A stretch of 35,329 nucleotides of DNA from Corallochytrium limacisporum Hawaii (Eukaryota; Protista; Pluriformea): assembly GCA_002811645.1 (NCBI GenBank), contig PDIP01000098.1:49658-84986 (forward strand). Reading direction: 5' to 3'. A program made the position numbers and the translations under genes. Below are positions 1 through 34,329 of this stretch, piece after piece. The first letter of the stretch is position 1; every line of letters starts with the position of its first letter. The notes under the pieces were generated by a model. The model saw nothing but the letters and a program-made list of their open reading frames with translations, had not been told where the DNA came from and did not search any database.

Positions 1-504
1 TTTGAACTCGGTTGGCGCGAATTTCTCCCTCCCTCCTTATTCCGGTTGATTAAATGTGATTTGGAGCAATATTTCGACGCAGAGGATAGTAGTATTTTAG
101 CTTTTTGGCTCTCGCTATTTGGATATACTTCCACGGGAGGGCACGGAAATTTTGCGAGGGAGGCTGGCTGCGACTGTTTGCGCCAGCTCGAGTTCGGTGA
201 GGAGTCCGTGTACGATCCTCCCGCTCATTCTTGCGATAACAAGCGCATACAAAGGCGTGCACAGGAAAGAACGACGAATGGTAGAAGAGTATCAAAGATA
301 TGTGTGAGAACAGAAACAAAGATACAGGAACATGACTATTGAGAACGGGAGAAGAAGAGCTTCATAGTGGCCATTGGACAACTAACGAAGAGTTGATCAG
401 AGAAACCTGATCGCAATGGAGTGTCTGACCTGAATAGCCGGATAGCGTCCTTTAGGGGATGGTAGAATGAGACAGGTTCTATATATTTCTTGAATAACAG
501 AGCT

Positions 505-1770
505 ATGAGTTCACTTGCTATTGCAACCATACAGAGATACCCAGATGGCTTGGCGCTAGTATCCTCTGGGAATCAGGACCATATCCCGCCAGACCTAAGA
601 AGGGTTTTGAAACTGCTTTCTCGTAGGATCGGGCAGTTGATGCACCGGACGAGTGACCGTGGATGTATTGTTCTCACGGCCGATGGAAAGGCTGATGGCA
701 AGCACCCCGCATTTTACTATCAAATCAGGGGCCAAATCAGCATCATTGTGTTCCTCTTTCCCGGGGGAAACTCACTGGCTCCGGCCACCGGGTGGACCCT
801 GTGCGCAGAAGGCATCAAGGCATTCTACTCGCACGTCAACTCAAGTGCGGTAGCGTCGGTACAGAGACCACACTCGTTCATGAGCATTGAACCAACTATG
901 CGTGCGATAGTTGAACAGTTTCTGTTTCAACAGACCCTCCCGCAAGTGGCTATGGCCTTGAATACGTCCGGGAATGAGACCTACGCACAGCCACCACCAG
1001 TGATGTCTCTTTACGAATGTCTAGGCAATGACTGTCCTGTGGAATACATTCCCGAGCAAGTCCGACAAGCATTATATGAGAACAGTCTAATGCCCTCGAA
1101 AACGGCGCAGAATACAAATGGTTCATCGGGGTACGGACCACGAGACTATCAGGATATGACAAGCGTGCCTCTGCATAATGATCTCTCGCAGGCCAGTTCA
1201 CCGGTCCGCATCCCGCACGATTCTCGATCCGGTCGGACCGTGCTTGGTGGTATGGGCGTAGGTTTGAATCGATTTGCGACAGACGGTAGTGAGAGTCTGG
1301 CGAGCATGGTAATGAACGGGAAGTCGTTGAGGACCGATCAGGGCAATTGGGACAACGGGCGCATCCTGTCCGTCCTCCTGATGATTCTCGTAGTGGCAGA
1401 ATCATTGGCGCAGGCTTTAAACAGGCGGATCGAAGCGGTACCCATATTTGAACTGGATGTCACGCATCCACACAAAGTCCCAGGCGAGAAGGCTTTTGTC
1501 GCCTACCACGCTAGCTTTGGAGCCACAGCCCTCCTGCTGGCATACGCCCTCGTCCGGAACGTCTTCTGGCGCATGGTGCCGGCCATACTCCTTCTGTTCA
1601 TGCTCACTACGCGGCTCATGTGTGTATATTACTACGACTACTACTGGGAATGGCACACAGAAACGCTCCAGGCCATTGCCGTACTGTGGATCCTGGCCCG
1701 CGAGTATTCAGCCGGTACGTTTAGCAGTAGCTCTGGACAGATGTCTGGTCAGGGACGACACAGAGATTAA
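505..1770 (+). CDS. SEC22A/SEC22C-like longin-domain multi-pass membrane trafficking protein (no SNARE coiled coil evident)
   Basis: N-terminal longin signature (IQRYPDGLALVSS ~ Sec22 RVxDGLPL; KLLSRRI; RPHSFMSIEP ~ RPYxFIEFD). C-terminal 3-4 hydrophobic segments, with FGATALLLAYALV..VFWRMV resembling the SEC22A TM region. First ATG is at 505; the track ORF starts at TTG 490. Confidence 0.75.
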   Translation: MSSLAIATIQRYPDGLALVSSGNQDHIPPDLRRVLKLLSRRIGQLMHRTSDRGCIVLTADGKADGKHPAFYYQIRGQISIIVFLFPGGNSLAPATGWTLCAEGIKAFYSHVNSSAVASVQRPHSFMSIEPTMRAIVEQFLFQQTLPQVAMALNTSGNETYAQPPPVMSLYECLGNDCPVEYIPEQVRQALYENSLMPSKTAQNTNGSSGYGPRDYQDMTSVPLHNDLSQASSPVRIPHDSRSGRTVLGGMGVGLNRFATDGSESLASMVMNGKSLRTDQGNWDNGRILSVLLMILVVAESLAQALNRRIEAVPIFELDVTHPHKVPGEKAFVAYHASFGATALLLAYALVRNVFWRMVPAILLLFMLTTRLMCVYYYDYYWEWHTETLQAIAVLWILAREYSAGTFSSSSGQMSGQGRHRD

Positions 1771-1813
1771 ACCGATACATTAGTGCTTCATTTATTTCGT
1801 TCATGCGTGTATG

Positions 1814-2152
1814 TCAGGGGCCCTCTTTGCTCTCATCCTTATGCTCTTCAAGTGCAACTAGAAGCTCCTTGACATGCAGCTTCCCGTGGCAAATCTTGTG
1901 GTTCCTAACATGGATCACGGGGACTGTCTCCGCGTAATCCTTCTTGGCCCAACCAAGTGGACCGTCCACTGAAAGTTCGTCAATGTTGACGATCCCTATC
2001 CGAAACGGTCTGGAGTTTTGTAGTTTTACTAGTTGGGAATAGGCAGTATCACATGGTGCGCAATTATGCTTCTTGAAGATCCACACCGGAGTCCCCGAGC
2101 CCAGTGAATGTGTGTTGAATCTCCGTACAGTTGTCGTTAGTAATCCACTCAT
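1814..2152 (-). CDS. Glutaredoxin-like protein (DUF836; C5orf63/YDR286C family), probable mitochondrial presequence
   Basis: CxxC (NCAPCD) after a beta strand, VNID, and a W...Y..TVPVIHV cis-Pro motif. N-terminus is rich in Thr/Arg and lacks acidic residues. Confidence 0.8.
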   Translation of the reverse strand: MSGLLTTTVRRFNTHSLGSGTPVWIFKKHNCAPCDTAYSQLVKLQNSRPFRIGIVNIDELSVDGPLGWAKKDYAETVPVIHVRNHKICHGKLHVKELLVALEEHKDESKEGP

Positions 2153-2409
2153 GGGTTCTGTCCAGTAAACATTTTAATCTTTCTCTTGTTCCTGTCTTTT
2201 CCTACTGCTACTCGTCATTCAGCTGGACAAAGACTTTATGAACCTTTGCGTTTTCTGATTCTATTTGCTCAACATCTCGGCCGAGATCCGGGGTGGGGAA
2301 GGGGAGGGCCCCCAACCCGCCACAAGTTTACTTTGCAGAAAGCTATGATGATGTATGGAGAATATTATGGACGAATAATTGTGTGATTTTGAAAATGATG
2401 GCGATGACT

Positions 2410-3438
2410 TTAGACGATAGAGTCAGCGTCCGAGCCCAGGCTAGCATTCTCGTATACATCGTTGCTTCTCTGGGCGTCTTGGTATACATGCGATTCATCA
2501 ATGGCATACGGGGACGCCCTGTTGATCCTGTTCGCACTGTCGTACATGTCCGCAGTAGCATCGATGTCCAGGTTTCGGATTGAAGACGTGGAAGGCTGGC
2601 TCTCCTTGCTTGTCCGCAGCTTCCTTCTCCCGGGCGAACCAGAAGATTCCAGTCCTGACCCCATCCATGCACTGTCGTATCCATCGGTGACATTGTTGAA
2701 ATAACCTTGGCTTGCCATGCTTCTCTGAATGAGATCAGCGTCTGTCTGGTTCTTGCTGTCGGTGCCCTGCTTGCGCTTGCGGATGAACAACACGGCAAAT
2801 ACTACAGTAGTGACCAGGGCCAACCCACCGACTACCCCCAGAACCGGAATCAGCCACTCCTCTGTAGAATTGCCACTGCTCTGGTCATCCTCTTCATTCG
2901 ATATTTCTGCGTTGTCGATGGCGAGAACGGAAATGTCTTGATCTGAAAAAGCGACGTTGTAAAAACCCTCATTGTACGCTTTAGTAACAGCAGCGAGAGT
3001 GTGTTCCTTATCACAAACTTCCTTCAACATCTCGTCATAGATAAGGATGTGAAGATCAGTGTCCTGGGCAGCATCGGCCATTACAGCAATACTACCTGGG
3101 ACCACTGCAAACCCACACAGTTCCTCTGAGGACGAGATCATTCTGAAACCTGCAGAGGTGGCAGTCCGAATGCTTGATACGACGTCTTCGCGATTCAAGT
3201 AAGTGACCAATGCACTCGTCTCGGTGCTGCTGGCCAGAGTCATGATCACTTCAGAGTCTATGTACATGCTGAACAATTCATCTACATCGTCAATGCTTGG
3301 TCCTTCTAAGTCAATGTCACCATCGTCATCGTCAGTGCTATTGTCAGTAGAGTTGCTTGCGTGCGTCCCGAGGGTGAACGAAAGTGCGAGAATGGCGAAT
3401 ATGGCCAGTAGCCGATTCCAACGCAATCTACCAGCCAT
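2410..3438 (-). CDS. Type I single-pass membrane protein with Tyr-motif cytoplasmic tail; no catalytic domain
   Basis: Signal peptide (MAGRLRWNRLLAIFAILALSFTLGTHA), NST sequons, TM LIPVLGVVGGLALVTTVVFAVLFI followed by RKRK. Tail carries YFNN, YDSA x2, YAID, YQDA, YENA and ends in -DSIV. ATG at 3438. Confidence 0.8.
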   Translation of the reverse strand: MAGRLRWNRLLAIFAILALSFTLGTHASNSTDNSTDDDDGDIDLEGPSIDDVDELFSMYIDSEVIMTLASSTETSALVTYLNREDVVSSIRTATSAGFRMISSSEELCGFAVVPGSIAVMADAAQDTDLHILIYDEMLKEVCDKEHTLAAVTKAYNEGFYNVAFSDQDISVLAIDNAEISNEEDDQSSGNSTEEWLIPVLGVVGGLALVTTVVFAVLFIRKRKQGTDSKNQTDADLIQRSMASQGYFNNVTDGYDSAWMGSGLESSGSPGRRKLRTSKESQPSTSSIRNLDIDATADMYDSANRINRASPYAIDESHVYQDAQRSNDVYENASLGSDADSIV

Positions 3439-4062
3439 TTTGTCTGTCGTGATCTGTAAATTGTGCAACACCCGAGGAATCTCTGATTGATTCCCGCCAG
3501 TTCTACTGTGACACCAGGGACATAAAGCCCTTAACTACCATCCGAAGTGTCCCAATACATGGGATCAATTCCAAAACGGCAAATCACATTCACCACCCCC
3601 AGTACTGCTCGGAGTGCAGACTTGGCTGTAGGCCCCCACGGTCGCAACGCAACAAAAGGTACGAGCGCTTGCGGGTGTGACCGCGGCAAGCCGACTTTCA
3701 CTATGGAAAATATAGGGACATTTTTCTACACCAGCCAAAGCCATCTCGCGATGAGAGGGAGACCTACTTGGAGCTTTCTCGTTTCCGAATCTTTCCTCTC
3801 GCTGGCCTGTTTCGTCGCACCGCTTAACGCCACCAGTCTGAATCAAAACCCAACGACACACAACCGTATCGTCCCTCAGCATCTGCGTGTACTTATGATA
3901 CGCCTTCTTGTGCTTAAAATTTGCGTATTGTGTGTGTGTACACATGTCAAGAAGATGGGAGAGAGGGTGTGAGCTAAATTACTGTCGTACGTATCTGTCG
4001 GATCATGCTCACACACACGAACACACCCGCAGCAACAGAGAGGCCACCCGGGGAGGGGTGGG

Positions 4063-4102
<40 letters not shown>

Positions 4103-4111
4103 GAGCAGAGA
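4063..4111 (+). repeat. (GA)n/(GAGACA)n microsatellite
   Basis: gagagagagagagagagacagagacagagacagagagagagagcagaga. Confidence 0.9.
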
Positions 4112-4662
4112 AGGGTGGGTAGGTACCCTTGTGTAGCCTACGACCGATTGTAACAGTACCTTTCGTGTCCGCGCACTGTGCTAACGTCACCTGATTCTTC
4201 GAAAAGGTGGGATTCTCCTCAGTATTCTTCTACTGCCAGAACACAGAGAAATACAAAGAAATCTCTCCCCTCTTTCTCCGTTATGAACAAACTCCCCGGG
4301 GGGGGGGGAGGGAGGCCCCATTCCGCCTTCGTCAAGCCGTGACCATATTCGGACACCTCCGACGTTGTCTCCAAGGCGTATTTGGACCTGTTCAGAGTTC
4401 AATATAGAAATCATCCACCTCTCTTTTTGCAGCGGTAATTTGTGATCGATTTCTTTTTTGTGTTCTACTTCCAATTTGGTCCAAGGGCAAAAAGGAAAAA
4501 AAGAAAACAACAAATCCAAACCCCCCCCCCTTCCTTCCCCCCGGGGGCGCACGCCCCCTGCCTCTCTCCTCCCTTCCCTGTTCTCTCCCTCACTACTATG
4601 TGTGGGTCTGTCGGCGCGGCTTGGTCTCCCGTGATGCACACGTAGAAGAGAGTGAGTAGTGC

Positions 4663-4688
4663 GTGTGTGTGTGTGTGTAGGGTGTGTG
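4663..4688 (+). repeat. (GT)n microsatellite
   Basis: gtgtgtgtgtgtgtgtagggtgtgtg. Confidence 0.85.
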
Positions 4689-6909
4689 GTTGGCGGCCGC
4701 GCCCCAAAAGGGAGGAAGGAAGGGGGGGGAGAGAGAGAAAAAAGAGGGAGAAGGAGTATAGGATTTCTACCAACAATTACTCTGCGGATGGCAGGGGTAT
4801 GGGTACTGGCCGTGCCGGTCGTGTATTCTCCATAAAAGGAGGGGGGTTCAGCGGAAATCAGGGTTAGAAGGTAGAGAGTGTGGGGGCCACCAAGGCGTTG
4901 AAAAAAGTTCCATGCCAGCTGCTTATGCCTAATATATTATTAACACGGTCTACGTGTGTTCCCGGAACGAAAATGAATTAGCTCGCCACCGCCAGAGGCG
5001 CTTTCTCTGCTTGTACGATCGCACCAAACGGTTCACATGCACCGAATAGTCAAGGCTTTCGGAACACGATGATGACTTGAAAGCAGCGGGAGGCAGTGCA
5101 GTTGCAGCTGCAGGTCTGGACACGGCTCAGACCTGAACATTGATCATGCACCCTATAGAAACTGACTACGACAGGGGCCGCATATCTAACTGTAGGGAGT
5201 ACATGCCCACTGTATCCGTCAATATCCTCTCTGACTGTGTGTGTCAGTACAAGTGAATTGGCGGTTGAGTTAGTGTGCTCGTTTGCAAGTTGCTTGGGTT
5301 TCATTGAACAAGCCCCAAGCCAGGACCGGCGTTCGGGGTTCAGTATCCAAGGACGATGAGCCGAGTAGGAAAGAAATTGTGGTTCCTACAGATAACACCA
5401 GTACGGACCAGATATTTTCCCGAAGTACATTAGGTACCGGAATGCGGGTATCGAGCAAGCACCAACTCCGAGCAGAGGATGGGACCCCGGATTTTGCTGG
5501 CCCCGACTGCCATCAATATCACAGGTCCATTAGTAGGAAACAGGGTCTGTTGCTCTACCGCACCAGAGTGAATGGAATGCTAGAGATTTGTGAAATCAGT
5601 GCACGCGGATGGAAACTGCCACAGTGGACAGTAGATCTGGTGGAGCTTAGCTGCGACCCACACCGTATGGAACATCATGAACTCTGGTTGACGACAGGAG
5701 AATCTCACGGCGGACAGACTCTGCACAGTTGGATTGGTGGATGTGTCTCACCTGTGGGAAGTTTGGCTCACTTGTGTGTTCCAAACCGCTGGATTACTAT
5801 GTTATTCCCGTTCCATGCTGAAAGGGACTACTACAGGTCGACTGGACGGCCCCAATAACCCACCTGCCGGAAAAACCATGGCCACACATTCCGAACCACT
5901 TTGCTCTCTAGCCGGTTCCTCGCTGCCGTAGGAAGGGAGGGTTGTCGCGGGGGTGCTTGACAACAGGCTAGAGACCATAGTTAATGTACTACTGCTGATG
6001 GCCCCAAGTGACGAAAAGTTAAAATGTTTCTTCCTATCAACCGCCATGGGACGGCGGGTTGGGCAGTGACAGATTTGTTTTCTCATGCTTGCCTTCGTTC
6101 CATCAGCACCGCGCAGTATTTGACAAGATGTGGCCCATAGTCTCACCATAACCTTGGCACGTTCTCATGGTTTATAAACATCTGGTTCGGCAGTCATTTT
6201 GACTGTGCTTCATGCCTCTTCCTCGCAAACCGGTGTCCTCACCATTGTGCCTGGCACATTGAGCCAATGAGAGGGCAGGAAAGTTCGACCCATCTTTTTG
6301 CGTCCACGACGGCACTTAATGTACCAGAGAGCGGCAACTTAGGGAGAACCGGTTTGCTTCCCACATTTTGATTCTGGCCGTGGCATCTCGATAAATTTTC
6401 AACTTATGGTTGAACTATCCACCAACATGCCAGTTGAAACATCATCAATTTATCTGCAGCACATTTGAGTCTTGAACGTGTCTAGTCCACTTCTGCGAAG
6501 GATACCATATTGCTGGGAACATTGGTACCATTCTCTGCAGAAGGGGGAGCAGCCTATACAGCTTTCCCCTTGAGACGTCACAAAGCATGATCCTCTGTGT
6601 AGTATGGAAATTTATTCCGCAATGTGCAAACTTCCCATTAGGAGATGCTGTGTCAACTTATGATGAGATTTCCATGCGTGCGTCATTCGAGTGAAAACGG
6701 TGCTTCAAAGTCGTTGTTTTCTCGAGAACGAGGAAAGCTACTTGGAGCGTGAAACTTTCAGTCAAAAGCGTAATTAAATGATCTCACTGTAACGACCTAT
6801 ATATTTGAACACAACATAGACATGTATACCTAATGGTCGGTAGGTTGACATATGTGTACAAGGATTATGATTTGACAGACTAGTACACGACACCAAGACA
6901 GACAAAGCT

Positions 6910-8865
6910 ATGGAAAAGCTCGGGATTGCAGAAGGGGATTCTGGAACCCCCCAGGTAGCAGCGGCCAATGTATGCTCAACAAAGCCGGCTCGTCCGGGAA
7001 TGGCAATCCCTCAAAGGGCACCCATGAAAACGTTAAACCTTATGGCAATCAAGCACAAGGTGTCAACGCAGTTTGAGCAAAGCCAGCAGCGCTTGAGTAT
7101 GGACGACGATGAAACATTGAATGATCTCCTTGACAGTCAGGCTGAGGTGGAAATTCTGGGCGACCGTGTTGTTTCGCGTGTCTCTCTTGCTACTCCGTGT
7201 TCGTTGTCAGCAAACACCCTCACCGAAGGAGACGAGTATGGCTCCGTGGACGAAGCCGACTATACATACACAGACGCAGATTACGGTGTGAAGCAGGGAG
7301 GATCTTATGAAGACGCGTACTATGAGGCCGATGACGCCAAGGGTTTGAACGGTACATACAACGCGGGTGCTAACGAGGGCCGAGAGCCGGTTGCTCCTCG
7401 GAAAATTGCAGCAGTAAACCCCGGGGACGATGGCGTCTACGGTGATGTTGACGACCACCAATACGATAAACCTGACGAGGACGGAGCATATGGTGAAGTA
7501 GATGACATCGCGGCCAAGCATGAGTATAAAGAGGTGGCCTCCGTGAACGGTCATGATGAAGAACGCGATGCGTACCCTGAGCTGGAGGATTCTATTGGTC
7601 CAGTGTCTTCCATCGTAAGCAGCACTCATGCACCATCGTGCACAAATTCCATTTACGCCAGTACACTCTATGAGGACCCTGCGGACGACTATTCTCAGAC
7701 CGAAGTGTCTCGTGACACTAGTTTGAGCAATCGTCCCCTGCCCCAAACACCGATGGGCGCGCGGCACAGCCGTACTTCCTCATCAATGTCTGCCACTACC
7801 ATTCCCTTGCCTCCACGCAATCCTACTCTGACCAAACTCCAGCAGTTCTGTCCACCAGCAGTGAGCCGATCTGCATCCGAGTCCTCCATGCAGGGTGCCG
7901 TGAAGGTGAGCACCAAGATCTACACAACTCCGACCTACGGCGTGCCTAGCCTGCTCCGGGAAAGTGACACCGCCAGTACAATCATTCGACAGTTCGTGCA
8001 CGATGGCCTGGATCCCAAAAAGAACTGGGCCATGCAGGAATCTATTCCGGCCTTGGGTCTGGTGCGGGTAATCGAAGACCATGAGAACATCGCAAAAATT
8101 GGTGTGCGGTGGCCAGATGGCAACAGTGGGGAATCCACCTCTCATATTCGATTCTTAATGAAGGACTATGAGAAGAAATTCAAGCTACCTGACTGTATGA
8201 ACAGCTGGGACGAATCCCTCCCGAACTACATTGAGGCGTGTACAATAAATCGCCTGCAAAAGGATGGAAAGTTCAAAAAGCGCCACATCAAGTGCTGTGA
8301 AGAGAGCGGCAGCAAAGTTCTGTATAATGACAAAGGCAAGGGTAAGTTCAAAGAGTTGTGTGACCTCAGCGAACTCATCATCTACCACACCATAGGCTTC
8401 AAGGAGCGAATGGGTGCCCCCACTGATCGTTGCCTGGTTCTAGTGCCGAATTCGACACCTTACACATTGCGCACCAAGGCTATTGTTCTCTGCTTTGAGG
8501 ACGAGTACGCCATGAATAACGCTGTTGCCATCTTGCGCCGGGCAAAATATGGCAGACAGATTGCTGTGGACGAGACATATCACCAGAGTCTCCAGTCCAT
8601 TGCCCTACCTACACATGTCACGCACCACTTCAGTGGCCGTGGTAAGGCCACAGTGTCCAAGACACCGAGCAGCAGCTCTGCCGGAGTTATGCGTCCGGAT
8701 GCCCACATCACCGGTTCTATTCTTGCCGATCGCACTGCCAGCCGGACTGGCAGCGACAGGGCAGCAAAGGCGGCAAATCACAAATTTGAGAAGAAGCATC
8801 AGCGAAATATGTCCAGGTCTAGCAACCATTTGGCGGGCAACGGCAATGGACGTCGCCGCAAGTAA
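6910..8865 (+). CDS. RA-PH adaptor of the MRL (RIAM/Lamellipodin/Mig-10)/Grb7 superfamily with a Tyr-rich N-terminal region
   Basis: RA domain (NWAMQESIPALGLVRVIEDHENI ~ WCLYEIYPELQIERFFEDHENV). PH domain (IYHTIGFKERMGAPTDRCLVL ~ YYG...KYKAPTDYCFVL; LRRAKYG ~ IRIAKYG). No C-terminal SH2 seen. Confidence 0.8.
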   Translation: MEKLGIAEGDSGTPQVAAANVCSTKPARPGMAIPQRAPMKTLNLMAIKHKVSTQFEQSQQRLSMDDDETLNDLLDSQAEVEILGDRVVSRVSLATPCSLSANTLTEGDEYGSVDEADYTYTDADYGVKQGGSYEDAYYEADDAKGLNGTYNAGANEGREPVAPRKIAAVNPGDDGVYGDVDDHQYDKPDEDGAYGEVDDIAAKHEYKEVASVNGHDEERDAYPELEDSIGPVSSIVSSTHAPSCTNSIYASTLYEDPADDYSQTEVSRDTSLSNRPLPQTPMGARHSRTSSSMSATTIPLPPRNPTLTKLQQFCPPAVSRSASESSMQGAVKVSTKIYTTPTYGVPSLLRESDTASTIIRQFVHDGLDPKKNWAMQESIPALGLVRVIEDHENIAKIGVRWPDGNSGESTSHIRFLMKDYEKKFKLPDCMNSWDESLPNYIEACTINRLQKDGKFKKRHIKCCEESGSKVLYNDKGKGKFKELCDLSELIIYHTIGFKERMGAPTDRCLVLVPNSTPYTLRTKAIVLCFEDEYAMNNAVAILRRAKYGRQIAVDETYHQSLQSIALPTHVTHHFSGRGKATVSKTPSSSSAGVMRPDAHITGSILADRTASRTGSDRAAKAANHKFEKKHQRNMSRSSNHLAGNGNGRRRK

Positions 8866-8944
8866 GGCTATCTTCGTCATCGTCATCATTCATGTAAACT
8901 AAAAGATTCTAAATATCTATCATGTATTGCATTTGACGGATGAT

Positions 8945-10270
8945 TCAGTCCGTTCCAATGTATTTCAGGTCCTTGAAACAAAACTGTGTTCGGCAAGTTG
9001 GACAGGGCAAAGTCAAGCTATCCCACTCTTCCGGGGGTGGCATGCTGTCGCCTCGATTTGTTTGGCTGCTGAACCAAGCCGCCATGCAGTCAAGGCACCA
9101 CATCGGTCGACAGAGGCATCTTCCGCAAAGCGGACGACGACATCGTTTACGAATGCACACTTCAGGCGCTTCTTGCATACACCCCACACATTCGTCATCT
9201 ATCTGCAATTGGTCCGTGACGCGGGTGCCAAATATTTCGGGTAGGAGAGTGTCGCTTTCTCGACTGCTATTAAATTTGATCCGCCGATTGAATTCCTCAG
9301 CAAATTCCTCGCGTAGGGTCTGCAGAATGATGATCTGTCTCGTGTTTCTGATTTCGTTGTCTAAGGCGTCATGAATGGCTCGTAAGCGATCAGACCGCAA
9401 TGTTACTTTTACCGCACCGGACCACCTCGGATTCAGCGAGTCGATAAGTATGTCGACATACTGCACGGTGCCACCTCTTCCAACCGCAGACACATTTACG
9501 CCATGCCTGACATTGTGCCTGGGCGGAAGGTTGGTGCTAATGAGGGGTTTGATGGTACGCTCATCCACGATGCTTAGGTCGGCAGCATGGCGGGGAATAA
9601 CGTGAAGAGAATACGCAGTGTTGACCAAGATCCAACGCATTGTGATGCTGAGCTTTTGTGATGCCTGTGCGCTGGACTGTCCACTTCCCTGTAGATCGTG
9701 TCCCGTCCAACCCCGGTCTACAATAGCAGCCACCCTGTCAAAGTCTGACATGTCGTTATTGACCTGCGCGGCAATATGATACCATCCTTCACTGCTGTAC
9801 CAAGGCAGAGGACCTGTACGACTCTGATCCCGCTCCAAAGCCGCAAGGCCAGCCATTCGCCAGGCACTGGGATGCAGACTCAAGTGACGGAAGAACAAAA
9901 CGCTGGCCGTCACGAAGACTAATGACCCAATCATTCCAAGATAGGGTAGAGTCACAAATGTGAAGTGCATAAAGGCCGCTTCCTTGTACTTATACTGTCC
10001 TGTATCGCTCAGTAACAATGCAAAGAAACCAAAGGCCAGGGTGGCATGCATCCCAATTGTGGCGGCACTTCGTCGCAAATGATACTCGACATAGTTCCTG
10101 CTTATTGATCCCAGGTACGAACCGAGTATGCCTTCTACTGTCAAACCTGCACGTACAAAGGCTTCCGGTGGGAACACGAAGCACAATGCGACTGTCACAT
10201 ACGCTAGTAACCCAGCGCGGAAGGCGTCCAGTCCCTCAGAGCTCCGGCCCCAACCTGATCTCGCAAGCAT
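8945..10270 (-). CDS. TMEM129: TMEM129 ER E3 ubiquitin ligase (C4C4 RING)
   Basis: N-terminal CFVFPP..F..AGLTV..ILG..LGS...YHLRRSAAT. C-terminal CVGCMQ...CLCRPMWCLDCM..WF...CPTCR..FC..DL. Confidence 0.92.
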   Translation of the reverse strand: MLARSGWGRSSEGLDAFRAGLLAYVTVALCFVFPPEAFVRAGLTVEGILGSYLGSISRNYVEYHLRRSAATIGMHATLAFGFFALLLSDTGQYKYKEAAFMHFTFVTLPYLGMIGSLVFVTASVLFFRHLSLHPSAWRMAGLAALERDQSRTGPLPWYSSEGWYHIAAQVNNDMSDFDRVAAIVDRGWTGHDLQGSGQSSAQASQKLSITMRWILVNTAYSLHVIPRHAADLSIVDERTIKPLISTNLPPRHNVRHGVNVSAVGRGGTVQYVDILIDSLNPRWSGAVKVTLRSDRLRAIHDALDNEIRNTRQIIILQTLREEFAEEFNRRIKFNSSRESDTLLPEIFGTRVTDQLQIDDECVGCMQEAPEVCIRKRCRRPLCGRCLCRPMWCLDCMAAWFSSQTNRGDSMPPPEEWDSLTLPCPTCRTQFCFKDLKYIGTD

Positions 10271-22128: not shown

Positions 22129-22201
22129 CGCGTATGTAGTATATATAAACAACATAGATTCGTGAATGATCAAAAAGTGAGAATTGTAATGTACATATTG
22201 G

Positions 22202-26286: not shown

Positions 26287-26959
26287 GATAGCCTGTCTTG
26301 TTGATTCCTGCTTTGGCACCTACATGGTAAGTAGTCTATCTAACTCTAAAAAGTGCTACGCCAACACGACCAATCTAGCAAAACAGAATTCGTAGGCGGG
26401 TCAAACGTGTTCAGGAGTTTCCATGTCTTCCTCAAGTTCCACTCACATAAGATCAACCGTTTGAATAGACTTCAACTTTTAAGAAGTCTCCCACCTGACA
26501 TAGCCCTTGCTGCCGGTTAGTCACAAATGCCAGCCGGTTGGGTCTCAACTGAGAGCCCGCCGGACCGCTTCCCTCAAACCACTCCCGCCTAAAAGTCTGG
26601 CGCAGAAATATTACCGCGTAAGACACAGCCAGCCAGGAAATGGACTCCCATTCCTGTGCTCGGCCTGTACGGACGTGGGTCGACTGGGCCCCAAGGCGCA
26701 GGTGGGTCTCATGTGCCGGCCAGGGAAACGACAGAGAGCGGGTCCGATATTGCCGCTGCACCACCGTCTAATGCACTCTCGGGCAGGAAAGTGCAATTAC
26801 CATACCGTCGGATATTTCAATGAGCTCGCCTGAAGTAATACAGGTAAAGAAATGGTTGTGATAAACTTGATTGGCATGTGACAGAGAGTGGAGAACTGTC
26901 TAGTTCCACACGACGGGGACATCACGCAATGGACTTCGTAACGTAACGAAAATGAAACT

Positions 26960-28570
26960 ATGTTAGGTAGATCTTTTAGTTTGAGCCGTGTTGGTGGAAA
27001 TCGCGTCCCCAATTATACGGCCGCTGTCTGCCGGGCATATTGTAAAGATCACAAAGGCTCTGGTCAGGATACGGGGAAGTTGGTGTACGGAATGGTGGTC
27101 GCGAAACCAAAGCAAAAATATGAGGTGCAGCCACGGAACCCGTTCCGAATCAAGAATGAAAAGTTTGTCCAGGCAACAAAGAAACAGACACACAAGAACA
27201 GCCTCAAGATGGGCGGAAACAAACAAAATCTTTCCAAAAAGGGACAGCAAACGCCCGGTCAACACGTTCGGCATGAACTTAGGCAAGCGGATGCTTCCGG
27301 TGACGTCCTGAAGATTGGTATGGAGAACTGGCACTGTGACAGCTGTGGAACGGTAAACACGGACTCCATGAGTCGAAAATGCGGCCATTGCAAGGCCCAA
27401 AGGCCCATGCACCTCGGGAACAAATGTAAATCATGCAAGCAACCCCTTTCTGTAGATTGGACAGGAAGGTGTCCTGCGTGCGGTGTGGATCATCCCCTCA
27501 GCAGGCAGGATTTTCCACACAGAAATTCTTTCTCTGATCTTACAGGACATTTGCCCCGCATGGTGGAGCTGTATGTGGGATTCCAAAAGATTTTAAAGAA
27601 GGCCCAGCAGCATTTGTATCTTATGCCAAACGTACATGATCAAGGCGATTTGGATGACGGGGCGGTTCCTCCAAGTCTCACGGTTAGCAAACAACATGAG
27701 CAACAGAGCCACCGCGCAGAACAAGAGTCAGCACGGGGTGTCTTGACAATGCTGAGACCCTGGGTGTGCTTTAGCTGCGGTATGGTGAACCCCGATGCGG
27801 ATCTGACACCGGAATGCATTGCTTGCGGACAGAATGACAGCGAGCAAGCGGCCTCCTTAGCGGACGTTGATCTGAACAGAATGAATCTTACTATGAACGA
27901 AGATCCTTATGATCCGTATCCAGTGATATGGAGGTGTCCACGGTGCGCAACAGTGCACAGCAAACGGGTCGTGACCAATGAAATTGCTCCTTTGCCTCGG
28001 CACGCTGACGATATCTCCGAAGACTGTACCGAAGTGAGTGTGGTGGAATCCAACGATTCTCTGCTTGCGGAGCAAATGTCACCCATTGCCGAAGCTCCCT
28101 CCGCAGCGTGCTCTATTTGTGATACAGGAGTATCAGTTGGATCATGGATCTGCTTTCAGTGCTGGAATCCGCAACCGGCGCACACCAGCCGATGCCAGTT
28201 CCAGGGCTGCGGCGCCCTACGCTACTTCCGCGGGACACAGTGGATGTGCACGTCGTGCCAGAACATTACGAAGGCACCACAAGCTCAGTGTGACCACTGT
28301 GGATGCGACGCTGAGGCAGTACAAGCTGGGCATGGATGGACCTGTCATCCATGCGGTGCATTTAATTTGGCTTGGGATACCTTCTGCCATCAATGCAGAC
28401 AGTTTCGACCGGACGGATTCGAAGTGCGGGAGCGAGCAAAGTCTAGAGGACGGGCCCAAGCAAAGCGGCCCTTTAATCGCCAATTGTCATCAAAGAATGG
28501 AGAAAGTGATGGCAATGTAGGGGACACAGATGGTGAGAACGGCTTTTCCGGACCACTCTTTGGACGGTGA
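26960..28570 (+). CDS. Multi zinc-ribbon (RanBP2-type) protein, possible mitochondrial presequence
   Basis: W-x-C-x2-C...C-x2-C modules: WHCDSC..CGHC, KCKSC..CPAC, WVCFSC..CIAC, WRCPRC....CSIC, WICFQC..CQFQGC, WMCTSC..CDHC, WTCHPC..CHQC. Confidence 0.8.
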   Translation: MLGRSFSLSRVGGNRVPNYTAAVCRAYCKDHKGSGQDTGKLVYGMVVAKPKQKYEVQPRNPFRIKNEKFVQATKKQTHKNSLKMGGNKQNLSKKGQQTPGQHVRHELRQADASGDVLKIGMENWHCDSCGTVNTDSMSRKCGHCKAQRPMHLGNKCKSCKQPLSVDWTGRCPACGVDHPLSRQDFPHRNSFSDLTGHLPRMVELYVGFQKILKKAQQHLYLMPNVHDQGDLDDGAVPPSLTVSKQHEQQSHRAEQESARGVLTMLRPWVCFSCGMVNPDADLTPECIACGQNDSEQAASLADVDLNRMNLTMNEDPYDPYPVIWRCPRCATVHSKRVVTNEIAPLPRHADDISEDCTEVSVVESNDSLLAEQMSPIAEAPSAACSICDTGVSVGSWICFQCWNPQPAHTSRCQFQGCGALRYFRGTQWMCTSCQNITKAPQAQCDHCGCDAEAVQAGHGWTCHPCGAFNLAWDTFCHQCRQFRPDGFEVRERAKSRGRAQAKRPFNRQLSSKNGESDGNVGDTDGENGFSGPLFGR

Positions 28571-28922
28571 AGGAGGCGAGTTGGGGATGAAACCACGGAC
28601 ACTAGCGATCAGCCCACTGACCCAACCCCCTCCCGGCTCCCTCCTCTCCCTCCGCCTTCACACCCCTTCCCCCTCCCTGACGTAGGTGGCTTTTTGTTCA
28701 CAACCGCGGGACTGACAGGACCCGCGGAGGTTCCAATTGTTGATCTTGTGTTGGCAAGATTGGGTTCGTTCAATTGCAAGACAAGCCACCATTGGCCATC
28801 TTAAGGTGTTTCACCAAGCTGCTCATGAGACAATCAACGTACAAGTAAAGACCCTCTTTTTTGAGATAAAGAACTAATTCAACAAACCAAGATCTACTTT
28901 AGTTTTGGAAATATTCATTCAG

Positions 28923-29636
28923 ATGACGGATTCAGGAATATCAGCTGCGGCCGCACGGGCCCATGACGTAAAATCTGTGCTAGAGGATGAAGAAGACGGA
29001 AAAAGAGCCCTTCATGTCCTGGTTGCTGTGACTGGTTCTGTGGCCAGCGTGAAACTACCTTTGTTGGTGGATTGCCTCTCTGCGACATTCAATACACGAA
29101 TGCAAGAGCAGCGCAGTACCTTGAGGAATAGATTCCCTAGTGGGATCAAGGTACGAGTCGTCACCACAAGTTCAGCACAGCATTTCTATGATAAAGGCGA
29201 AGTTGAACAGAAAATTGGAGCACCCATTTGGAACGACGAGGACGAATGGTCTATGTGGCAAAGGATGGGTGATCCAGTGCTGCACATTGAGCTGCGTCGG
29301 TGGGCGGACGTGTGCCTCATCGCACCTTTAGATGCGAACACTATGGCAAAGATGGCAAATGGTATGAGCGACAATCTTATCAGTTGCCTCACCCGTTGTT
29401 GGGATTTCACTCTGGCACCGATGATCGTGGCGCCAGCGATGAACACCTTAATGTGGGAGAGTCCGTTCACGGCACAGCATTTGGAGAGGCTGAAGGAAGT
29501 TGGAGCCGATGTAATTCCACCAATATCTAAAACACTGGCCTGCGGTGACACCGGTGTCGGTGCCATGGAACAGGTGGACAAGATAGCCTCCTACGTAATT
29601 GACAAGGCAGAGTCATGGCCTTATCACGGAATGTGA
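28923..29636 (+). CDS. PPCDC: Phosphopantothenoylcysteine decarboxylase (HFCD flavoprotein, CoA synthesis)
   Basis: VTGSVAS, VLHIELRRWAD (catalytic His), APLDANTMAK, PAMNTLMW, KTLACGDTGVGAM (catalytic Cys). ATG at 28923. Confidence 0.95.
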   Translation: MTDSGISAAAARAHDVKSVLEDEEDGKRALHVLVAVTGSVASVKLPLLVDCLSATFNTRMQEQRSTLRNRFPSGIKVRVVTTSSAQHFYDKGEVEQKIGAPIWNDEDEWSMWQRMGDPVLHIELRRWADVCLIAPLDANTMAKMANGMSDNLISCLTRCWDFTLAPMIVAPAMNTLMWESPFTAQHLERLKEVGADVIPPISKTLACGDTGVGAMEQVDKIASYVIDKAESWPYHGM

Positions 29637-29739
29637 TGAAGTCTACGTTTCTCTATAAATATGCAAGTAACAATGTATATCTGTATCATAGTGACTGTCT
29701 CAAGGTGCAACCGTCTCTAAACAGGAATCGGTGGGGATT

Positions 29740-31101
29740 TCAGAAGTTGCCACCGAGCCGTCCGAGCCGGCGGCTTTGCGTTGGCATCGTCCGACGGTAG
29801 GAGCTTGGTCCATCACCGCCGCGCTGAGGACTGGTGCCTTCACTGTCCACTGTACGGTTCGGTGTGAATTGCGCAGTGTCACCACTGTTGAGCTCAGGGA
29901 CGCTGTTTCGGCCTGCCCGCAGGCCGCGTACGGCAGATGCCCCATCAGTATGGCTCACTGTTGACTCTGGTTCCCCTGCGCTGACCATCTCACTCTCAGC
30001 CGGCTGTAAAGATCCACAGCCGTTGCTTCCATCGTCTGCTCTTCGTGCGTTTCTGTTCGGACTGAGGTCTTTCAAATTGGTCGTGACTGTCGTGATGCGG
30101 GTCAAATGGGCATCACCTGCACGGCGCTGTTGCTGTTTCTGTTGCAAAGCCAAGAACTCACTATCCGAGTCCATCACCATACTACCATCGACGGGCATGC
30201 CAAAAATGCCGCTATGATGCTGTTCACCAACGCTATCTCCGCCGTTGTCGCTAAAGGAAACTTCACCCTCCGACCGGTAGTACTCATAGCCGCGGTATAA
30301 TGGCTGACGGTACGCTGAACCGCGACCACTGCTCATGGCCCCTCTGGTGGGCACAGCACTCGACGGTGTTGGTGAGTCCGTCGTCTTCGGCTGGTCGTGC
30401 CTGCGGTGCCTTAGATTGTAGCGGCTACTTGAGTTCGATCGGCCCGTGTCCACACTGTTTGTGTGCCCATTGGCATTTCCATCGTGGGCAGCCTTTACGG
30501 CCTGCTCGCCGTTCAGAGAGAGGTATACCTCGCTGGTGTCTGGCGATGACACGTAGCCAGGCCGTGACGGTGGCCCGCGATTGCCCATTACTGTCGGTCC
30601 CGACATGTACTGGAGCGGCCGTACGCTTTCATTGCTCATGCCTTGGCCACCCCGAGCGTGGCGTTTGTTCTTTAACACGATGATGTTTCCGTCGTAGTCA
30701 CAGCTCAGGTTGTACGTGGCCAACACACGGCGCATGCGGCGCACGGTTGTTCTGCGGGCTGCGATCTTATCTTCGTAGAAACCCAGGGCCATGAAGAGTA
30801 ACAGTCCCAGTAGACTCATAGGCATTAAACTCTTGCTGCTCAACCATTGTGATTCCTCTTCATCTAGACTACACCACCAGCTCCAGAATGTGTACGCAAA
30901 TAGCAAGAAGACAATCCCCAGAATGATTTGGAAAAAGAATCTAGTATTCTTCAGTCGGCTCAGTTGCGACTTTAATTCTCGTTCAAACACTTCGAGGTCT
31001 GTTTTGCGTCTTGAAGCCAGCATTGGTACCCGGGGATCTGTCTGTGATGTGCTCGGCTGGTTTTGGTTCAGCTCCTGCTGACCAACCCGATTCCCGCGCA
31101 T
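29740..31101 (-). CDS. CNEP1R1: CNEP1R1 (TMEM188)/Spo7-like regulatory subunit of the CTDNEP1/Nem1 phosphatase, with a long disordered C-terminal tail
   Basis: DLEVFEREL ~ DLKAFERRL; two TM segments; RRVLATYNLSCDYDGNII ~ RTVLAEYNMSCDDTGKLI. Confidence 0.8.
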   Translation of the reverse strand: MRGNRVGQQELNQNQPSTSQTDPRVPMLASRRKTDLEVFERELKSQLSRLKNTRFFFQIILGIVFLLFAYTFWSWWCSLDEEESQWLSSKSLMPMSLLGLLLFMALGFYEDKIAARRTTVRRMRRVLATYNLSCDYDGNIIVLKNKRHARGGQGMSNESVRPLQYMSGPTVMGNRGPPSRPGYVSSPDTSEVYLSLNGEQAVKAAHDGNANGHTNSVDTGRSNSSSRYNLRHRRHDQPKTTDSPTPSSAVPTRGAMSSGRGSAYRQPLYRGYEYYRSEGEVSFSDNGGDSVGEQHHSGIFGMPVDGSMVMDSDSEFLALQQKQQQRRAGDAHLTRITTVTTNLKDLSPNRNARRADDGSNGCGSLQPAESEMVSAGEPESTVSHTDGASAVRGLRAGRNSVPELNSGDTAQFTPNRTVDSEGTSPQRGGDGPSSYRRTMPTQSRRLGRLGGNF

Positions 31102-32063
31102 GGGTGTTCGTAAAATTGGTTAAACCCCTTCGCTAGGTATACTTCTTACCGCGCGGGTTGATTCTTCTGGCGTGTCATTTTGCTAATAAATATTCCCAAT
31201 ATGTTTCTTTCCTTTTTGAACTGCGGAGGTGCTCCTTGAGTACTGCAATGCCCCGTCGCTGTATTACCTTCGTGCACCTGACTCTCGATAAAGATTATGC
31301 TGTTCTGGGCTTTAAATAGCCGGGTCCAACGAGGTACACACGGACCAATTATCCTGTGCTCACAGCATCATATCTTCACGTTCCTCAGGGCACCATACTT
31401 GACAATAAGATGTCACAATGTGCGCATGTAGCCCACTCCAATATCCACAGAAACGAAAAATGCAACAACAGTAATCAGGCACCACCAGTATGACAAAGGA
31501 AATGACGGCTATCAGCCCAGGCACACCCTGCACAACGTTTCGTGAAGGGTCCCCCGGTCCGTACGCGCCTCTTTTCGCGACCCGAACCGGGCGGAGCCGG
31601 CCCTGCCTTCCCTGGAGTTTTGTGTGAAGAAAACACGGGCGCCTCTTGCTTTTAGACTTTTCTTCGCCTTTTCTACGGAGACGCATTAGCTGATAGCCCT
31701 AGGGTTTTGGGAGACCTCAGTGGGGGTTACGAATACCCAAAAGAGAAAGTCCGCTCCCTCCTTGAACCCTCCTTTTCGATTCCCTCAGAGAGGAAATGAG
31801 TAATATTGACCTTCTGGTCAGCAAGGAACACACCACCGCCAACCCTGCCATTTTCTTCGATTTTTCACTCGGTGGAGGAGGGGACCGGTGACACGGCCAC
31901 GGGAGTGACGAGAGAGAGTGTGTGCGCGCGTTGGACATCTGGCACAAACCAAAGAGAATCGGACCTGACAATGGAGTTCTATTGGATGGAATCGCTGCCA
32001 AGGCAATGATGAGAACACACGGACTATGAAGTATGGTTGATGCTAATGTTACATTTATGAGTC

Positions 32064-33887
32064 TTATGAAGCAGGTGCGCGGGTACTGCTTTCCTCAAAG
32101 AGGCGGTCAAAGACAGCGAAGAGGTTGCCGTTGATGTAATCGTTGTCAACAACGTTTACCAGATACCACGAATCGCGGATACGGTCAATCATCTTACGAC
32201 TGTGCGTGTCGGGCTCGTAGAGCTTGCTCCAGCGGTTCCACAAGGCAAACGCCTCATCCTTCCAAACCATGAAGCTGACCGGGTCCACCACGGTCGGCTG
32301 AATAATTTCCTTGCCCGGGAACACACCCCATGTGACAGCGGTAGCCGTGCGTTCACTGATATTGGTAATCTCTTCCTGGCCCTTGGCATCGATGGCGTGG
32401 TAAGAGAGATTCGGAAACTCCTTGAGGATCACCAACAGGAGCTCGAACATCTCCTTGCTGATGAAGAACTCCATATAGGCCTTCTGGTACACGTATCCGT
32501 TGGGCCCGCCCCATCCGTAAATGTGGTGATCACTCTTAACGCCGTTGATAGGGGGCTGAGAATTGATGGTCAGGATACCATGGCGATTGATGTTAATCAG
32601 TTGGTCCTTGATGGCCTCGGTCTCAAGATGCAGAGGACCGTCGTCACCATCACTCCACGGTAGGCACTTGACAGTGTTGTCGTTGCTGAGGTACTTGCAG
32701 AAGACATCGTAGACATCTTGCTCGCTCTTCAACTCAGATCCCCACTGAGCCTGCAGATGCTTGTTGTCGGCACACTTGGAATCCAATTGGAAGATGTGGT
32801 AGTCGGTCAGATCGCCGAACGCCGGGGAGTCGGAGTTACCCCAGCGACCGTTGGGGAAGTCATCCCAGTCTTGAGTACGGTTGAGGTAGGACTTTGGACG
32901 GCTGGACCAGAAGATTGGTCGTACATCCTCACTGCTGCGACGGGTGGAAGCAGAAGATCTCCAAGGCAAAGCACGAGGAGTAGAAGTCTCCTTCCACAGA
33001 CCGACGTTCTTAAGAATCTCGCGGGTGGCAATCTCACGGTTGAGAGTGTACATGTGTACGCCCTCAACACCGGCGTCAAGTAGTTCCTTGATCATCTTGG
33101 AAGCAAGCTGCACACCGTAAGCACGCACAGCTTCGTCATTGTCCTTGACGGCCTCAACAGCCTCCACGATTTCGTTGGGAGGGTTCAACTTGCTCAGTTT
33201 GGTCAGATGGCGCAAACTTGCATAGCCCTGAATTGGCAGTACCCCTGGAATGATAGGAACCGTAATGCCCATGTTACGGCAGTCCTCGCGGAACTTCAGG
33301 AAAGTTTCAGTCTCGAAAAAGAGTTGCGTGATGATAAAGTCAGCACCGGCGTCAACTTTCATCTTCAAGTAGCGCAGGTCCTCTTCGTAGCTCACGCAAT
33401 CGGGGTGGCCGTTCGGGTAGCCAGCAGCACAGATGCAGAATTCATTACCGAATTTCTGCTTAACATGTGCAATAAGCTCAGTAGCATAGCTGAAGCCGCC
33501 CTTATGGGCCTTGAACTCCTCTCCGGGAGGCGGATCACCACGAAGGGCAAGGATGTTTTGGATACCACTCTGGCGAGCTTGTTCCATATGCTTTGTAACC
33601 TGCTCTGCGTCAGAGTCAGCACACGTGTAGTGCAGCAAAGTGTCCAGACCGCAATAGTTTATGGCAGTGGAAGCAATGCTCATGGAGCTGGTGCTTTGGG
33701 AGCCAGAGGGGTCACCACCTCCAGCGCCCCATGTAATGTCGATGAAAAGAGGGCGTCCCCGAGCCATACGATCGAAACGGTCCACGAGGTTGATGGCGCC
33801 ATTGGTGGTGCGTGGAGGGAAGAATTCTAGGCTGAAGAAAGGGTCACCAGACTCCTTGGCCGCGTTAATCTTATCAATGATCTTCAT
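32064..33887 (-). CDS. MTHFR: Methylenetetrahydrofolate reductase, eukaryotic type with SAM-binding regulatory domain
   Basis: FSLEFFPP, ITWGAGG, ILALRGDPP, AGYPNGH, TQLFF, MYTLNRE, EDVRPIFW, WDDFPNGRWG, TINSQP, YQKAYMEFF, AVTWGVFPG. ATG at 33887 (MKIIDKI). Confidence 0.98.
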   Translation of the reverse strand: MKIIDKINAAKESGDPFFSLEFFPPRTTNGAINLVDRFDRMARGRPLFIDITWGAGGGDPSGSQSTSSMSIASTAINYCGLDTLLHYTCADSDAEQVTKHMEQARQSGIQNILALRGDPPPGEEFKAHKGGFSYATELIAHVKQKFGNEFCICAAGYPNGHPDCVSYEEDLRYLKMKVDAGADFIITQLFFETETFLKFREDCRNMGITVPIIPGVLPIQGYASLRHLTKLSKLNPPNEIVEAVEAVKDNDEAVRAYGVQLASKMIKELLDAGVEGVHMYTLNREIATREILKNVGLWKETSTPRALPWRSSASTRRSSEDVRPIFWSSRPKSYLNRTQDWDDFPNGRWGNSDSPAFGDLTDYHIFQLDSKCADNKHLQAQWGSELKSEQDVYDVFCKYLSNDNTVKCLPWSDGDDGPLHLETEAIKDQLININRHGILTINSQPPINGVKSDHHIYGWGGPNGYVYQKAYMEFFISKEMFELLLVILKEFPNLSYHAIDAKGQEEITNISERTATAVTWGVFPGKEIIQPTVVDPVSFMVWKDEAFALWNRWSKLYEPDTHSRKMIDRIRDSWYLVNVVDNDYINGNLFAVFDRLFEESSTRAPAS

Positions 33888-34329
33888 GTTTAACAAAGTG
33901 TATGCCCATTGACCCTTTCAGTAAACAAGCGCAGATTTCATTCAACGTATGGAGTACCAAGAAGACAAACCCGTCTGGTTCTTGGACAACTACAACACAG
34001 GTTGAAGAGAATATTTTTGGTCGTCTCACAGAGACGTTCTAGTTTCACCTCGAACAATGAAACTATAACCAATAAATATGGCTAAAGAAACGGAACAACT
34101 CTCCCATTAGATACTTCTGTTATGCCACTGAAGTAGCTAGGGATCACCCAGTGGATCCCCGTGGCCGTTGTCTGGTAAGGCCATTCGAACAAACCCAGTG
34201 CTTAATGGAAACTACTGCGACAACGACGAATAAACGCACAACTAGCATAAAAATGATCTCATCATTCTTCTTGTCTGGAATTCCGGTAAGTGGTTTCGGG
34301 TCCAAACGCGCGGTTTTCGTTTTGTTGTA

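What the first reader, a model, noticed from the sequence alone, without database searches (positions are those of the whole stretch)
467..33909. Window-wide CAG/GACAG signal just before start codons: possible trans-splicing, leader introns or an undescribed initiation element
Seen: in 10 of 16 genes a CAG ends 0-9 nt upstream of the ATG. They are SEC22-like aaCAG-4nt (498), glutaredoxin gaCAG-5 (2160), receptor gaCAG-5 (3446), adaptor gaCAG-8 (6899), TTC7 gaCAG-5 (11013), microprotein gaCAG-9 (15078), DCTN2 tgCAG-6 (17324), TMEM177 agCAG-3 (21217), GHKL gaCAG-6 (26295) and PPCDC ttCAG-0 (28920). Six are GACAG. TTC7 and glutaredoxin share CTGGACAGAAnnnATG exactly; receptor and adaptor share GACAGACAAA; STN1 has GACAAG-ATG. 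Rough uniform-base chance is about 15% per gene for CAG and about 1% for GACAG. CDSs have no introns, and the GC-rich promoter-like islands generally lie over 100 nt, often several hundred nt, upstream. Inference: these are 3' splice acceptors (spliced-leader trans-splicing with outrons, which I do not know from unicellular holozoans, or a single surviving 5'-UTR intron per gene), or an initiator/TISU-like element giving very short leaders. Polypyrimidine tracts are weak and good GT donors occur in only some leaders. Start codons were chosen by eye.
Basis: partly seen in the sequence, partly recalled or inferred. Interest (0 to 1): 0.8.

Follow-up and report, generated by a model that had tools for sequence, protein, structure and literature searches.

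The report
Weak YAGA word before start codons
The run of CAG/GACAG just before start codons in this window is a local cluster that the rest of the genome does not repeat. RNA contigs run straight through it, so it is not a splice site. A weaker, real word (C/T-A-G-A-C/A) does sit before about four in ten start codons and may mark where transcripts begin.

Summary
In an independent 200 kb (74 ORFs), CAG ending 0-9 nt before the ATG occurs in 20% of genes against a 15% background, and GACAG in 1 of 74. The long shared words are not enriched in the whole genome.

A looser oriented word, Y-A-G-A-[C>A], is enriched about 2-fold in the last 30 nt before start codons. It is present in about 43% of genes against 22% expected (z about 4.6). 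Several other first-stage notes on this genome flagged the same YAG|A pattern on other DNA.

RNA contigs of two 2015 runs cover three motif genes. They run colinearly through the motifs, to 49 nt and 108 nt upstream of two ATGs and across the whole intergenic stretch above the third. There are no joints. The only loose end is a fold-back artefact, and no pyrimidine tract precedes the AG. Spliced-leader trans-splicing and leader introns are therefore not supported.

The initiator or short-leader alternative stays open. The word needs a pyrimidine-A step, and upstream ATGs are depleted only within about 50 nt. Contigs, however, cannot show transcript starts. The genome is probably Corallochytrium limacisporum. 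Interest is low to moderate.

The parts
498..500 (+). CAG 4 nt before the ATG 505 of the SEC22-like ORF (aataaCAGagctATG). It is not a YAGA[CA] word. A TATATAT lies at -25..-19.
2156..2160 (-). CAGAA (within CTGGACAGAA) 3 nt before the ATG 2152 of the glutaredoxin-like ORF. An out-of-frame upstream ATG at 2171 opens a 7-codon uORF that ends over the start codon.
   Evidence: X2 contig 5 runs colinearly through it
3442..3446 (-). CAGAC (within GACAGACAAA) 3 nt before the ATG 3438 of the receptor-like ORF.
   Evidence: X1 contig 2 (2345-3487, laid over its whole length) runs colinearly 49 nt upstream of the ATG
6876..6880 (+). Distal CAGAC in the adaptor-like leader, 34 nt before the ATG 6910.
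   Evidence: X2 contig 6 covers it
6899..6903 (+). Proximal CAGAC (AGACAGACAAAGCT-ATG) of the adaptor-like ORF.
   Evidence: X2 contig 6 reaches 6802, 108 nt upstream of the ATG, through four upstream ATGs
11013..11017 (+). CAGAA (CTGGACAGAAAAT-ATG) before the TTC7-like TPR ORF, ATG 11021.
15076..15078 (-). CAG 9 nt before a small ATG at about 15066. The microprotein itself is unverified. A CAGAC lies at 15093-15097.
17324..17326 (+). CAG 6 nt before the dynamitin ATG 17333. It is not a YAGA[CA] word.
21217..21219 (+). CAG 3 nt before the ATG 21223 of the M48-like ORF. CAGAT is not the favoured word.
26293..26295 (-). CAG (AAGACAGG) 6 nt before the ATG 26286 of the GHKL ATPase ORF.
28920..28922 (+). 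CAG abutting the ATG 28923 of the PPCDC-like flavoprotein ORF.
20594..20841 (.). Assembly gap in the G/C-run-rich divergent intergenic region. It is not part of any gene model or motif site.

Best explanation
Shown: the window's CAG/GACAG run is a local over-representation, found post hoc, of one variant of a weak genome-wide oriented word. That word has the consensus (A)-Y-A-G-A-[C>A] and floats mostly 5-30 nt upstream of start codons in roughly 40% of genes. It is not a splice acceptor in the dominant transcripts, because RNA contigs are colinear with the genome across it.

Inferred: the word is most likely an initiator-like, start-site-proximal core-promoter preference. RNA polymerase II would start at the A of the Y-A step, with G-A-M at +2 to +4. 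A share of mRNAs would then have short leaders of about 5-40 nt, beside longer transcripts that start upstream and carry upstream ATGs. The A/C-rich stretch and A at -3 that follow are an ordinary Kozak-type context.
For: Word specificity in -30..-1: CAGA[CA] 1.9x, TAGA[CA] 2.0x, AAGA[CA] 1.05x, GAGA[CA] 0.6x. For the fifth base, C gives 2.3x and A 1.7x, while G and T give none.

Independent sample (C186 ORFs of 300 aa or more): 25 sites against 11.3 +/- 3.0, in 20/47 genes against 10 expected. The zones -60..-31 and +4..+33 are near background.

The count peaks at -20..-1 and the reverse complement is depleted there. The information lies at and downstream of the Y-A step, with no pyrimidine tract upstream.

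Out-of-frame upstream ATGs are 0.8x of permuted triplets in -50..-1 but 1.6x in -110..-51 (Fisher p 0.001). They are not depleted in the 60 nt upstream of the word.

There are no joints and no leader-like loose ends in two runs over three motif genes. The single loose end, at 7369, is the reverse complement of nearby sequence.

Kozak-type context: A at -3 in 62% of genes, C at -1 and -2.
Against: Contigs reach 49 nt (receptor-like) and 108 nt (adaptor-like) upstream of the ATG. They also cross the whole intergenic region above the glutaredoxin-like gene. So transcripts that start well upstream of the word exist, and contigs give no levels.

Only about 20% of genes carry the word in excess of expectation. 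No TATA-to-word spacing was seen. A composite TGTAC..YAGAC..ATG pattern is not enriched genome-wide, 382 against 437. Leaders of 5-13 nt would be unusually short for a free-living eukaryote that scans for its start codon (my knowledge).

Confidence: 0.4

Rival explanations
1. The word is a leader-embedded RNA element or an extended translation context. It would be transcribed inside ordinary 50-150 nt leaders and act on the mRNA, for example by keeping an unstructured A/C-rich run-up to the AUG, as a protein-binding site, or as an RRACH-like methylation site (AGAC-H).
For: Contigs show the word inside transcribed leaders. It is strand-specific. There is a mild positional preference: G at -6 in 28/89 genes against about 17 at neighbouring positions, AGAC starting at -7 in 6 genes, and YAGA starting at -8 in 6. 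It merges into the A/C-rich Kozak zone.
Against: The position floats over about 30 nt, unlike a start-codon context. The need for a pyrimidine before AGA is not part of DRACH, and YAGAA, which lacks the C, is also enriched. Upstream ATGs are not depleted upstream of the word, which is odd if long leaders are the translated form.
Confidence: 0.25
2. The word has no function. The window cluster is chance (look-elsewhere over 471 windows and about 1,000 pentamers). The YAGA[CA] excess would be a by-product of local composition or mutational bias near gene starts.
For: CAG and GACAG are not replicated. The long words are at control level genome-wide. The excess is only about 2-fold and the region is A-rich and T-poor. 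The sample is small.
Against: Dinucleotide shuffles of the same 12- or 30-nt segments never or almost never reach the observed YAGA[CA] count. The base requirements are specific at five positions. Other first-stage readers noted YAG|A on other contigs; these are unchecked notes.
Confidence: 0.2
3. YAG|A is a 3' splice acceptor, for spliced-leader trans-splicing or for a leader intron. It would be used in a minority of molecules, in other conditions, or at other genes.
For: YAG followed by a purine is the canonical acceptor shape. The genome keeps U2 snRNA (113 bits) although coding sequences lack introns (PMC5560861). Upstream ATGs are frequent above the site.
Against: There is no joint and no shared non-genomic leader at any of the three motif genes in two runs, and contigs pass unbroken through the sites. 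No pyrimidine tract is present, and A is the commonest base just before the Y. Tandem AGs such as GACAGACAG are atypical for acceptors. Only about 40% of genes have the word. No paper in the library links Corallochytrium with a spliced leader.
Confidence: 0.06

Closest known systems
Initiator (Inr) core-promoter elements (mammalian YYANWYY/BBCABW, Drosophila TCAGTY, Trichomonas TCAYW)
   Same: A pyrimidine-A step followed by a few informative bases downstream. Oriented with the gene and placed close upstream of the coding sequence. The position floats relative to the ATG. The fly consensus also reads CAG at -1 to +2 (my knowledge).
   Different: Coincidence with mapped transcript starts is untested. 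The downstream bases (G-A-M) differ from the described consensuses. Only about 40% of genes carry the word, and the distances to the ATG are very short.
Spliced-leader trans-splice acceptors (kinetoplastids, nematodes, dinoflagellates, some animals)
   Same: A YAG lies a short distance upstream of the start codon of intronless coding sequences.
   Different: There is no common leader on the RNA contigs, the transcripts are colinear upstream, no pyrimidine tract is present, and the genes are not in polycistronic arrays.
Kozak-type start-codon context, and TISU for very short leaders
   Same: A at -3 and C at -1/-2 are present, with a weak G at -6 as in the vertebrate consensus (my knowledge).
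   Different: YAGA[CA] is not fixed in position. It does not overlap the ATG as TISU (SAASATGGCGGC) does.
m6A DRACH/RRACH sites
   Same: AGAC-A/C/T fits RRACH.
   Different: The required pyrimidine lies outside DRACH, and YAGAA, which lacks the C, is also enriched. No methylation data are available.

Membership tests
Spliced-leader trans-splicing | A common non-genomic leader joined to mRNAs at the acceptor AG | tested here: not met
   there are no loose ends at the motifs of three genes in two runs. The one loose end (7369, inside a CDS) is a fold-back. These are contigs, not raw reads, so a rare form could be missed.
Spliced-leader trans-splicing | Mature transcripts are not colinear with the genome upstream of the acceptor | tested here: not met
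   the contigs spanning 2345-3487, 6802-7500 and 1550-3396 are colinear through the sites.
Spliced-leader trans-splicing | An SL RNA gene (leader, GT donor and Sm site), usually in repeats | not tested
   No candidate leader sequence emerged to search with, and Rfam SL models are lineage-specific.
Spliced-leader trans-splicing or cis intron | A pyrimidine tract or branch signal upstream of the YAG | tested here: not met
   at 61 YAGA sites, positions -12..-1 are A-rich (28-49% A) and about 45% pyrimidine.
5'-UTR cis intron | GT..AG junctions in RNA that end at the motif | tested here: not met
   no joints in either run over 5,951 nt.
Initiator element | A pyrimidine(-1) purine(+1) step with a conserved downstream context, oriented with the gene | tested here: met
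   Y is required, with G-A-[C>A] downstream, and the reverse complement is depleted.
Initiator element | Capped 5' ends map onto the element | not testable with these tools
   Only contigs were available and they cannot show starts. The contigs extend upstream of the word.
Initiator element | A fixed spacing from a TATA-like box where one exists | tested here: inconclusive
   there are too few TATA-word pairs and no peak.
Kozak-type context | A fixed position relative to the AUG | tested here: not met
   A at -3 and C at -1/-2 are fixed, but YAGA[CA] floats over about 30 nt.

The most novel reading that the evidence does not exclude
YAG|A is a genuine acceptor used by a minority of molecules or genes. 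That would mean spliced-leader trans-splicing, or leader-restricted cis-splicing, in a unicellular relative of animals whose coding sequences have lost all introns. It would explain both the retained spliceosome and the leaders laden with upstream ATGs.
Probability: 0.04. Interest if true: 0.8.

Novelty: new member of a known kind. Interest (0 to 1): 0.25.

Why it matters
If the YAGA[CA] word marks transcript starts, it would be the first core-promoter element described for this lineage. A 2020 preprint on transfecting Corallochytrium states that no regulatory sequences had been described. It would help to annotate starts and leaders and to design expression constructs in a transfectable relative of animals. 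It would also explain how genes are translated despite many ATGs further upstream. The more exciting reading, trans-splicing in a unicellular holozoan, is made unlikely here, which saves follow-up effort on the several sibling notes in this genome.

Tried and rejected
- **More genome sequence.** A logo over all genes was therefore impossible.
- **Transcript contigs through the look-up of encoding contigs.** Nothing is on record for the window's proteins. The listing of cluster members showed only singleton EukProt entries.
- **Whole-genome pattern counts.** Gene starts are about 1% of all ATGs, so these counts are insensitive. They showed no strong element.
- **TATA-to-word spacing.** There were too few cases.
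- **Tiny GTA..YAG leader introns.** I considered these because GTA/TGTA is enriched 10-30 nt upstream of the word. I rejected them because the lengths of 9-25 nt vary and a contig is colinear across one of them.
- **m6A DRACH reading.** The pyrimidine requirement and the enrichment of YAGAA do not fit.
- **U6 snRNA search.** It was uninformative because too few candidates were scored.
- **Pfam on the ORFs of the RNA-silent 3.3 kb.** No hits.
- **Organism identity.** I did not confirm it directly. It rests on assembly size, lack of introns, the EukProt source and two 2015 runs about 1% apart.
Full report
**What the window is.** The window is G000:C283:49658-84986 of a 24,109,830-base assembly in 286 contigs. 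It holds about 16 ATG-initiated, uninterrupted ORFs on both strands. Pfam assigns Tmpp129, a TPR protein, dynamitin, an OB-fold protein, an M48-like protein, an RCC1-like protein, a GHKL ATPase, a flavoprotein (PPCDC-like), Tmemb_18A, MTHFR and a glutaredoxin-like protein. Ten of ten ORFs tested are exact entries of EukProt, so the starts chosen by eye equal the annotated starts. Several features fit Corallochytrium limacisporum as described in PMC5560861: the assembly size, the lack of coding introns, and two 2015 RNA-like runs that differ by about 1%. That identity is inferred, not proven.

**The assembly gap.** The gap at 20594-20841 lies in the divergent intergenic region between the starts at 20324(-) and 21223(+). 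It sits next to a G13 run and a C-rich tract. No ORF crosses it, and it is 270 and 381 nt from the two motif sites. Continuity across it cannot be shown, but nothing below depends on it.

**Checking the observation.**
- Every CAG site is at the stated coordinate with the stated spacing, and the shared longer words are real.
- Within the window, 8 of 15 long ORFs have a CAG ending 0-9 nt before the ATG, against 2.6 in other upstream 12-nt windows. Four of 15 have GACAG there.
- To test this independently I fetched C186:1-200000.
- CAG in -40..-1 equals dinucleotide-preserving shuffles, 64 against 62.6.
- In the whole genome, GACAGAC-N0-12-ATG gives 698 against 567 for the backward control. GACAGACAAA-N0-5-ATG gives 10 against 8. 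CTGGACAGAANNNATG occurs four times, two of them in this window.

The CAG/GACAG signal is therefore a local cluster. The binomial probabilities are 0.005 and 4e-5, but they are post hoc. Over 471 windows and about 1,000 pentamers, such clusters are expected.

**What is real.**
- The pentamers ACAGA, AGACA and CAGAC are about 5-fold commoner in -40..-1 than in -400..-100. They stay about 2- to 2.6-fold above dinucleotide shuffles.
- Generalising gives Y-A-G-A-[C>A]. In -30..-1, CAGA[CA] is 1.9x and TAGA[CA] is 2.0x. AAGA[CA] is 1.05x and GAGA[CA] is 0.6x. For the fifth base, C gives 2.3x and A 1.7x, while G and T give none.
- In the independent C186 ORFs of 300 aa or more there are 25 sites against 11.3 +/- 3.0. 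None of 300 shuffles reaches that count. The sites fall in 20/47 genes against 10 expected.
- The zones -60..-31 and +4..+33 are near background.
- The word peaks at -20..-1 and its reverse complement is depleted there.
- Its position floats. The only fixed-position signals are A at -3 (62%), C at -1 and -2, and a weak G at -6.
- Other first-stage notes on this genome report YAG|A before start codons on other contigs. They are unchecked, but my C186 test agrees with them.

**RNA evidence.** Two runs of 2015 hold the region as contigs. Their cover is restricted to genes, and 3488-6801 has none, so they behave as RNA and not as DNA.
- X1 contig 2 (1,143 nt) lies wholly on 2345-3487. It runs colinearly through ACAGACA to 49 nt upstream of the receptor-like ATG.
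- X2 contig 6 reaches 6802, 108 nt upstream of the adaptor-like ATG, and passes through both CAGAC copies.
- X2 contig 5 runs colinearly from 1550 to 3396, through the glutaredoxin-like motif and the whole intergenic stretch.
- There are no joints. The one loose end, at 7369 inside a CDS, is the reverse complement of sequence at 7265, which marks it as a fold-back artefact.

A frequent spliced form should have broken these contigs at the AG or left leader letters, and neither is seen. In addition, the 12 nt before the YAG are A-rich and are not a pyrimidine tract. The two splicing readings are therefore not supported, with one caveat: contigs can miss rare forms.

**Initiator or leader element.** Contigs cannot show starts or levels, so upstream colinear RNA does not exclude a major start at the word.

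Points for an initiator-like role:
- The word needs a pyrimidine-A step.
- Its information lies downstream of that step.
- It is oriented with the gene.
- Out-of-frame upstream ATGs are 0.8x of permuted triplets in -50..-1 but 1.6x in -110..-51 (Fisher p 0.001).
- Upstream ATGs are not depleted in the 60 nt above the word.
- The long leaders seen in contigs carry upstream ATGs. There are four in 6802-6909, and one uORF overlaps the glutaredoxin-like start.

Points against:
- No TATA-to-word spacing was seen.
- A TGTAC..YAGAC..ATG composite is not enriched genome-wide, 382 against 437.
- Leaders of 5-13 nt would be unusually short.
- Only about 20% of genes carry the word above expectation.

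My odds are initiator-like about 0.4, a leader or translation element about 0.25, no function about 0.2, and an acceptor about 0.06.

**Comparison with what is known.** The paper library holds no report of a spliced leader in Corallochytrium. A 2020 preprint says no regulatory sequences had been described for it. PMC5560861 reports 0.0 introns per kb of coding sequence. It also reports loss of three of the four exon-junction-complex components and of most SR factors. Those losses may relax selection against upstream ORFs, but that link is my inference. U2 snRNA is present, so some splicing persists somewhere in the genome.

**Verdict.** The splicing interpretations are not supported. A weak, specific YAGA[CA] word near start codons is real and deserves 5'-end mapping. 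Interest is low to moderate.

Noticed in passing
window 3488-6801: This 3.3-kb stretch has no RNA contig cover in either run, only short ORFs without Pfam hits, and two internal repeats flagged by the read tool (4049-4112, 4650-4753). It is unusually empty for this compact genome.
   Followed up: partly
window + L001-L020, -110..-51 upstream of start codons: ATG is 1.6x commoner than its five letter permutations 51-110 nt upstream of start codons (88 against 54). It is at parity further out and 0.8x closer in. This could reflect a promoter word that contains ATG, or abundant uORFs.
   Followed up: partly
window + L001-L020, -40..-20 upstream of start codons: TGTA (33 against 14.2 in shuffles, z 5.5), GTAC and TACA are enriched 20-40 nt upstream of start codons. 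Both orientations are enriched, which suggests a palindromic DNA-level site (TGTACA-like) just upstream of the YAGA[CA] zone.
   Followed up: partly
window 2153-2171 (-) and 6802-6909 (+): The transcribed long leaders carry upstream ATGs. A 7-codon uORF starts at 2171 and its TGA overlaps the glutaredoxin-like ATG. Four upstream ATGs (6823, 6834, 6852, 6868) lie ahead of the adaptor-like ATG.
   Followed up: partly
window 1550-3396: Run X2 differs from the assembly at 17 of 1,847 positions, 8 of them in the 257-nt intergenic stretch 2153-2409. Run X1 is identical to the assembly. The two runs therefore look like two strains about 1% apart.
   Followed up: no
window 1770-1814: The convergent SEC22-like and glutaredoxin-like ORFs end 44 nt apart, and single contigs span both. 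Their transcripts probably overlap at the 3' ends.
   Followed up: no
G000:C186:634533-634753 (-): A full-length U2 snRNA (113 bits) is present in a genome whose coding sequences lack introns. A U6 search scored too few candidates to be informative.
   Followed up: partly
window 2157-2172 (-) and 11008-11023 (+): CTGGACAGAANNNATG has only four copies in the 24-Mb genome. Two of them lie 8.9 kb apart in this window, on opposite strands, each at a gene start.
   Followed up: partly
window 20842-20900: A G13 homopolymer and G-rich runs abut the assembly gap, and a C-rich tract lies on the other side. G/C-run islands are typical 150-400 nt upstream of genes here and probably caused the gap.
   Followed up: partly
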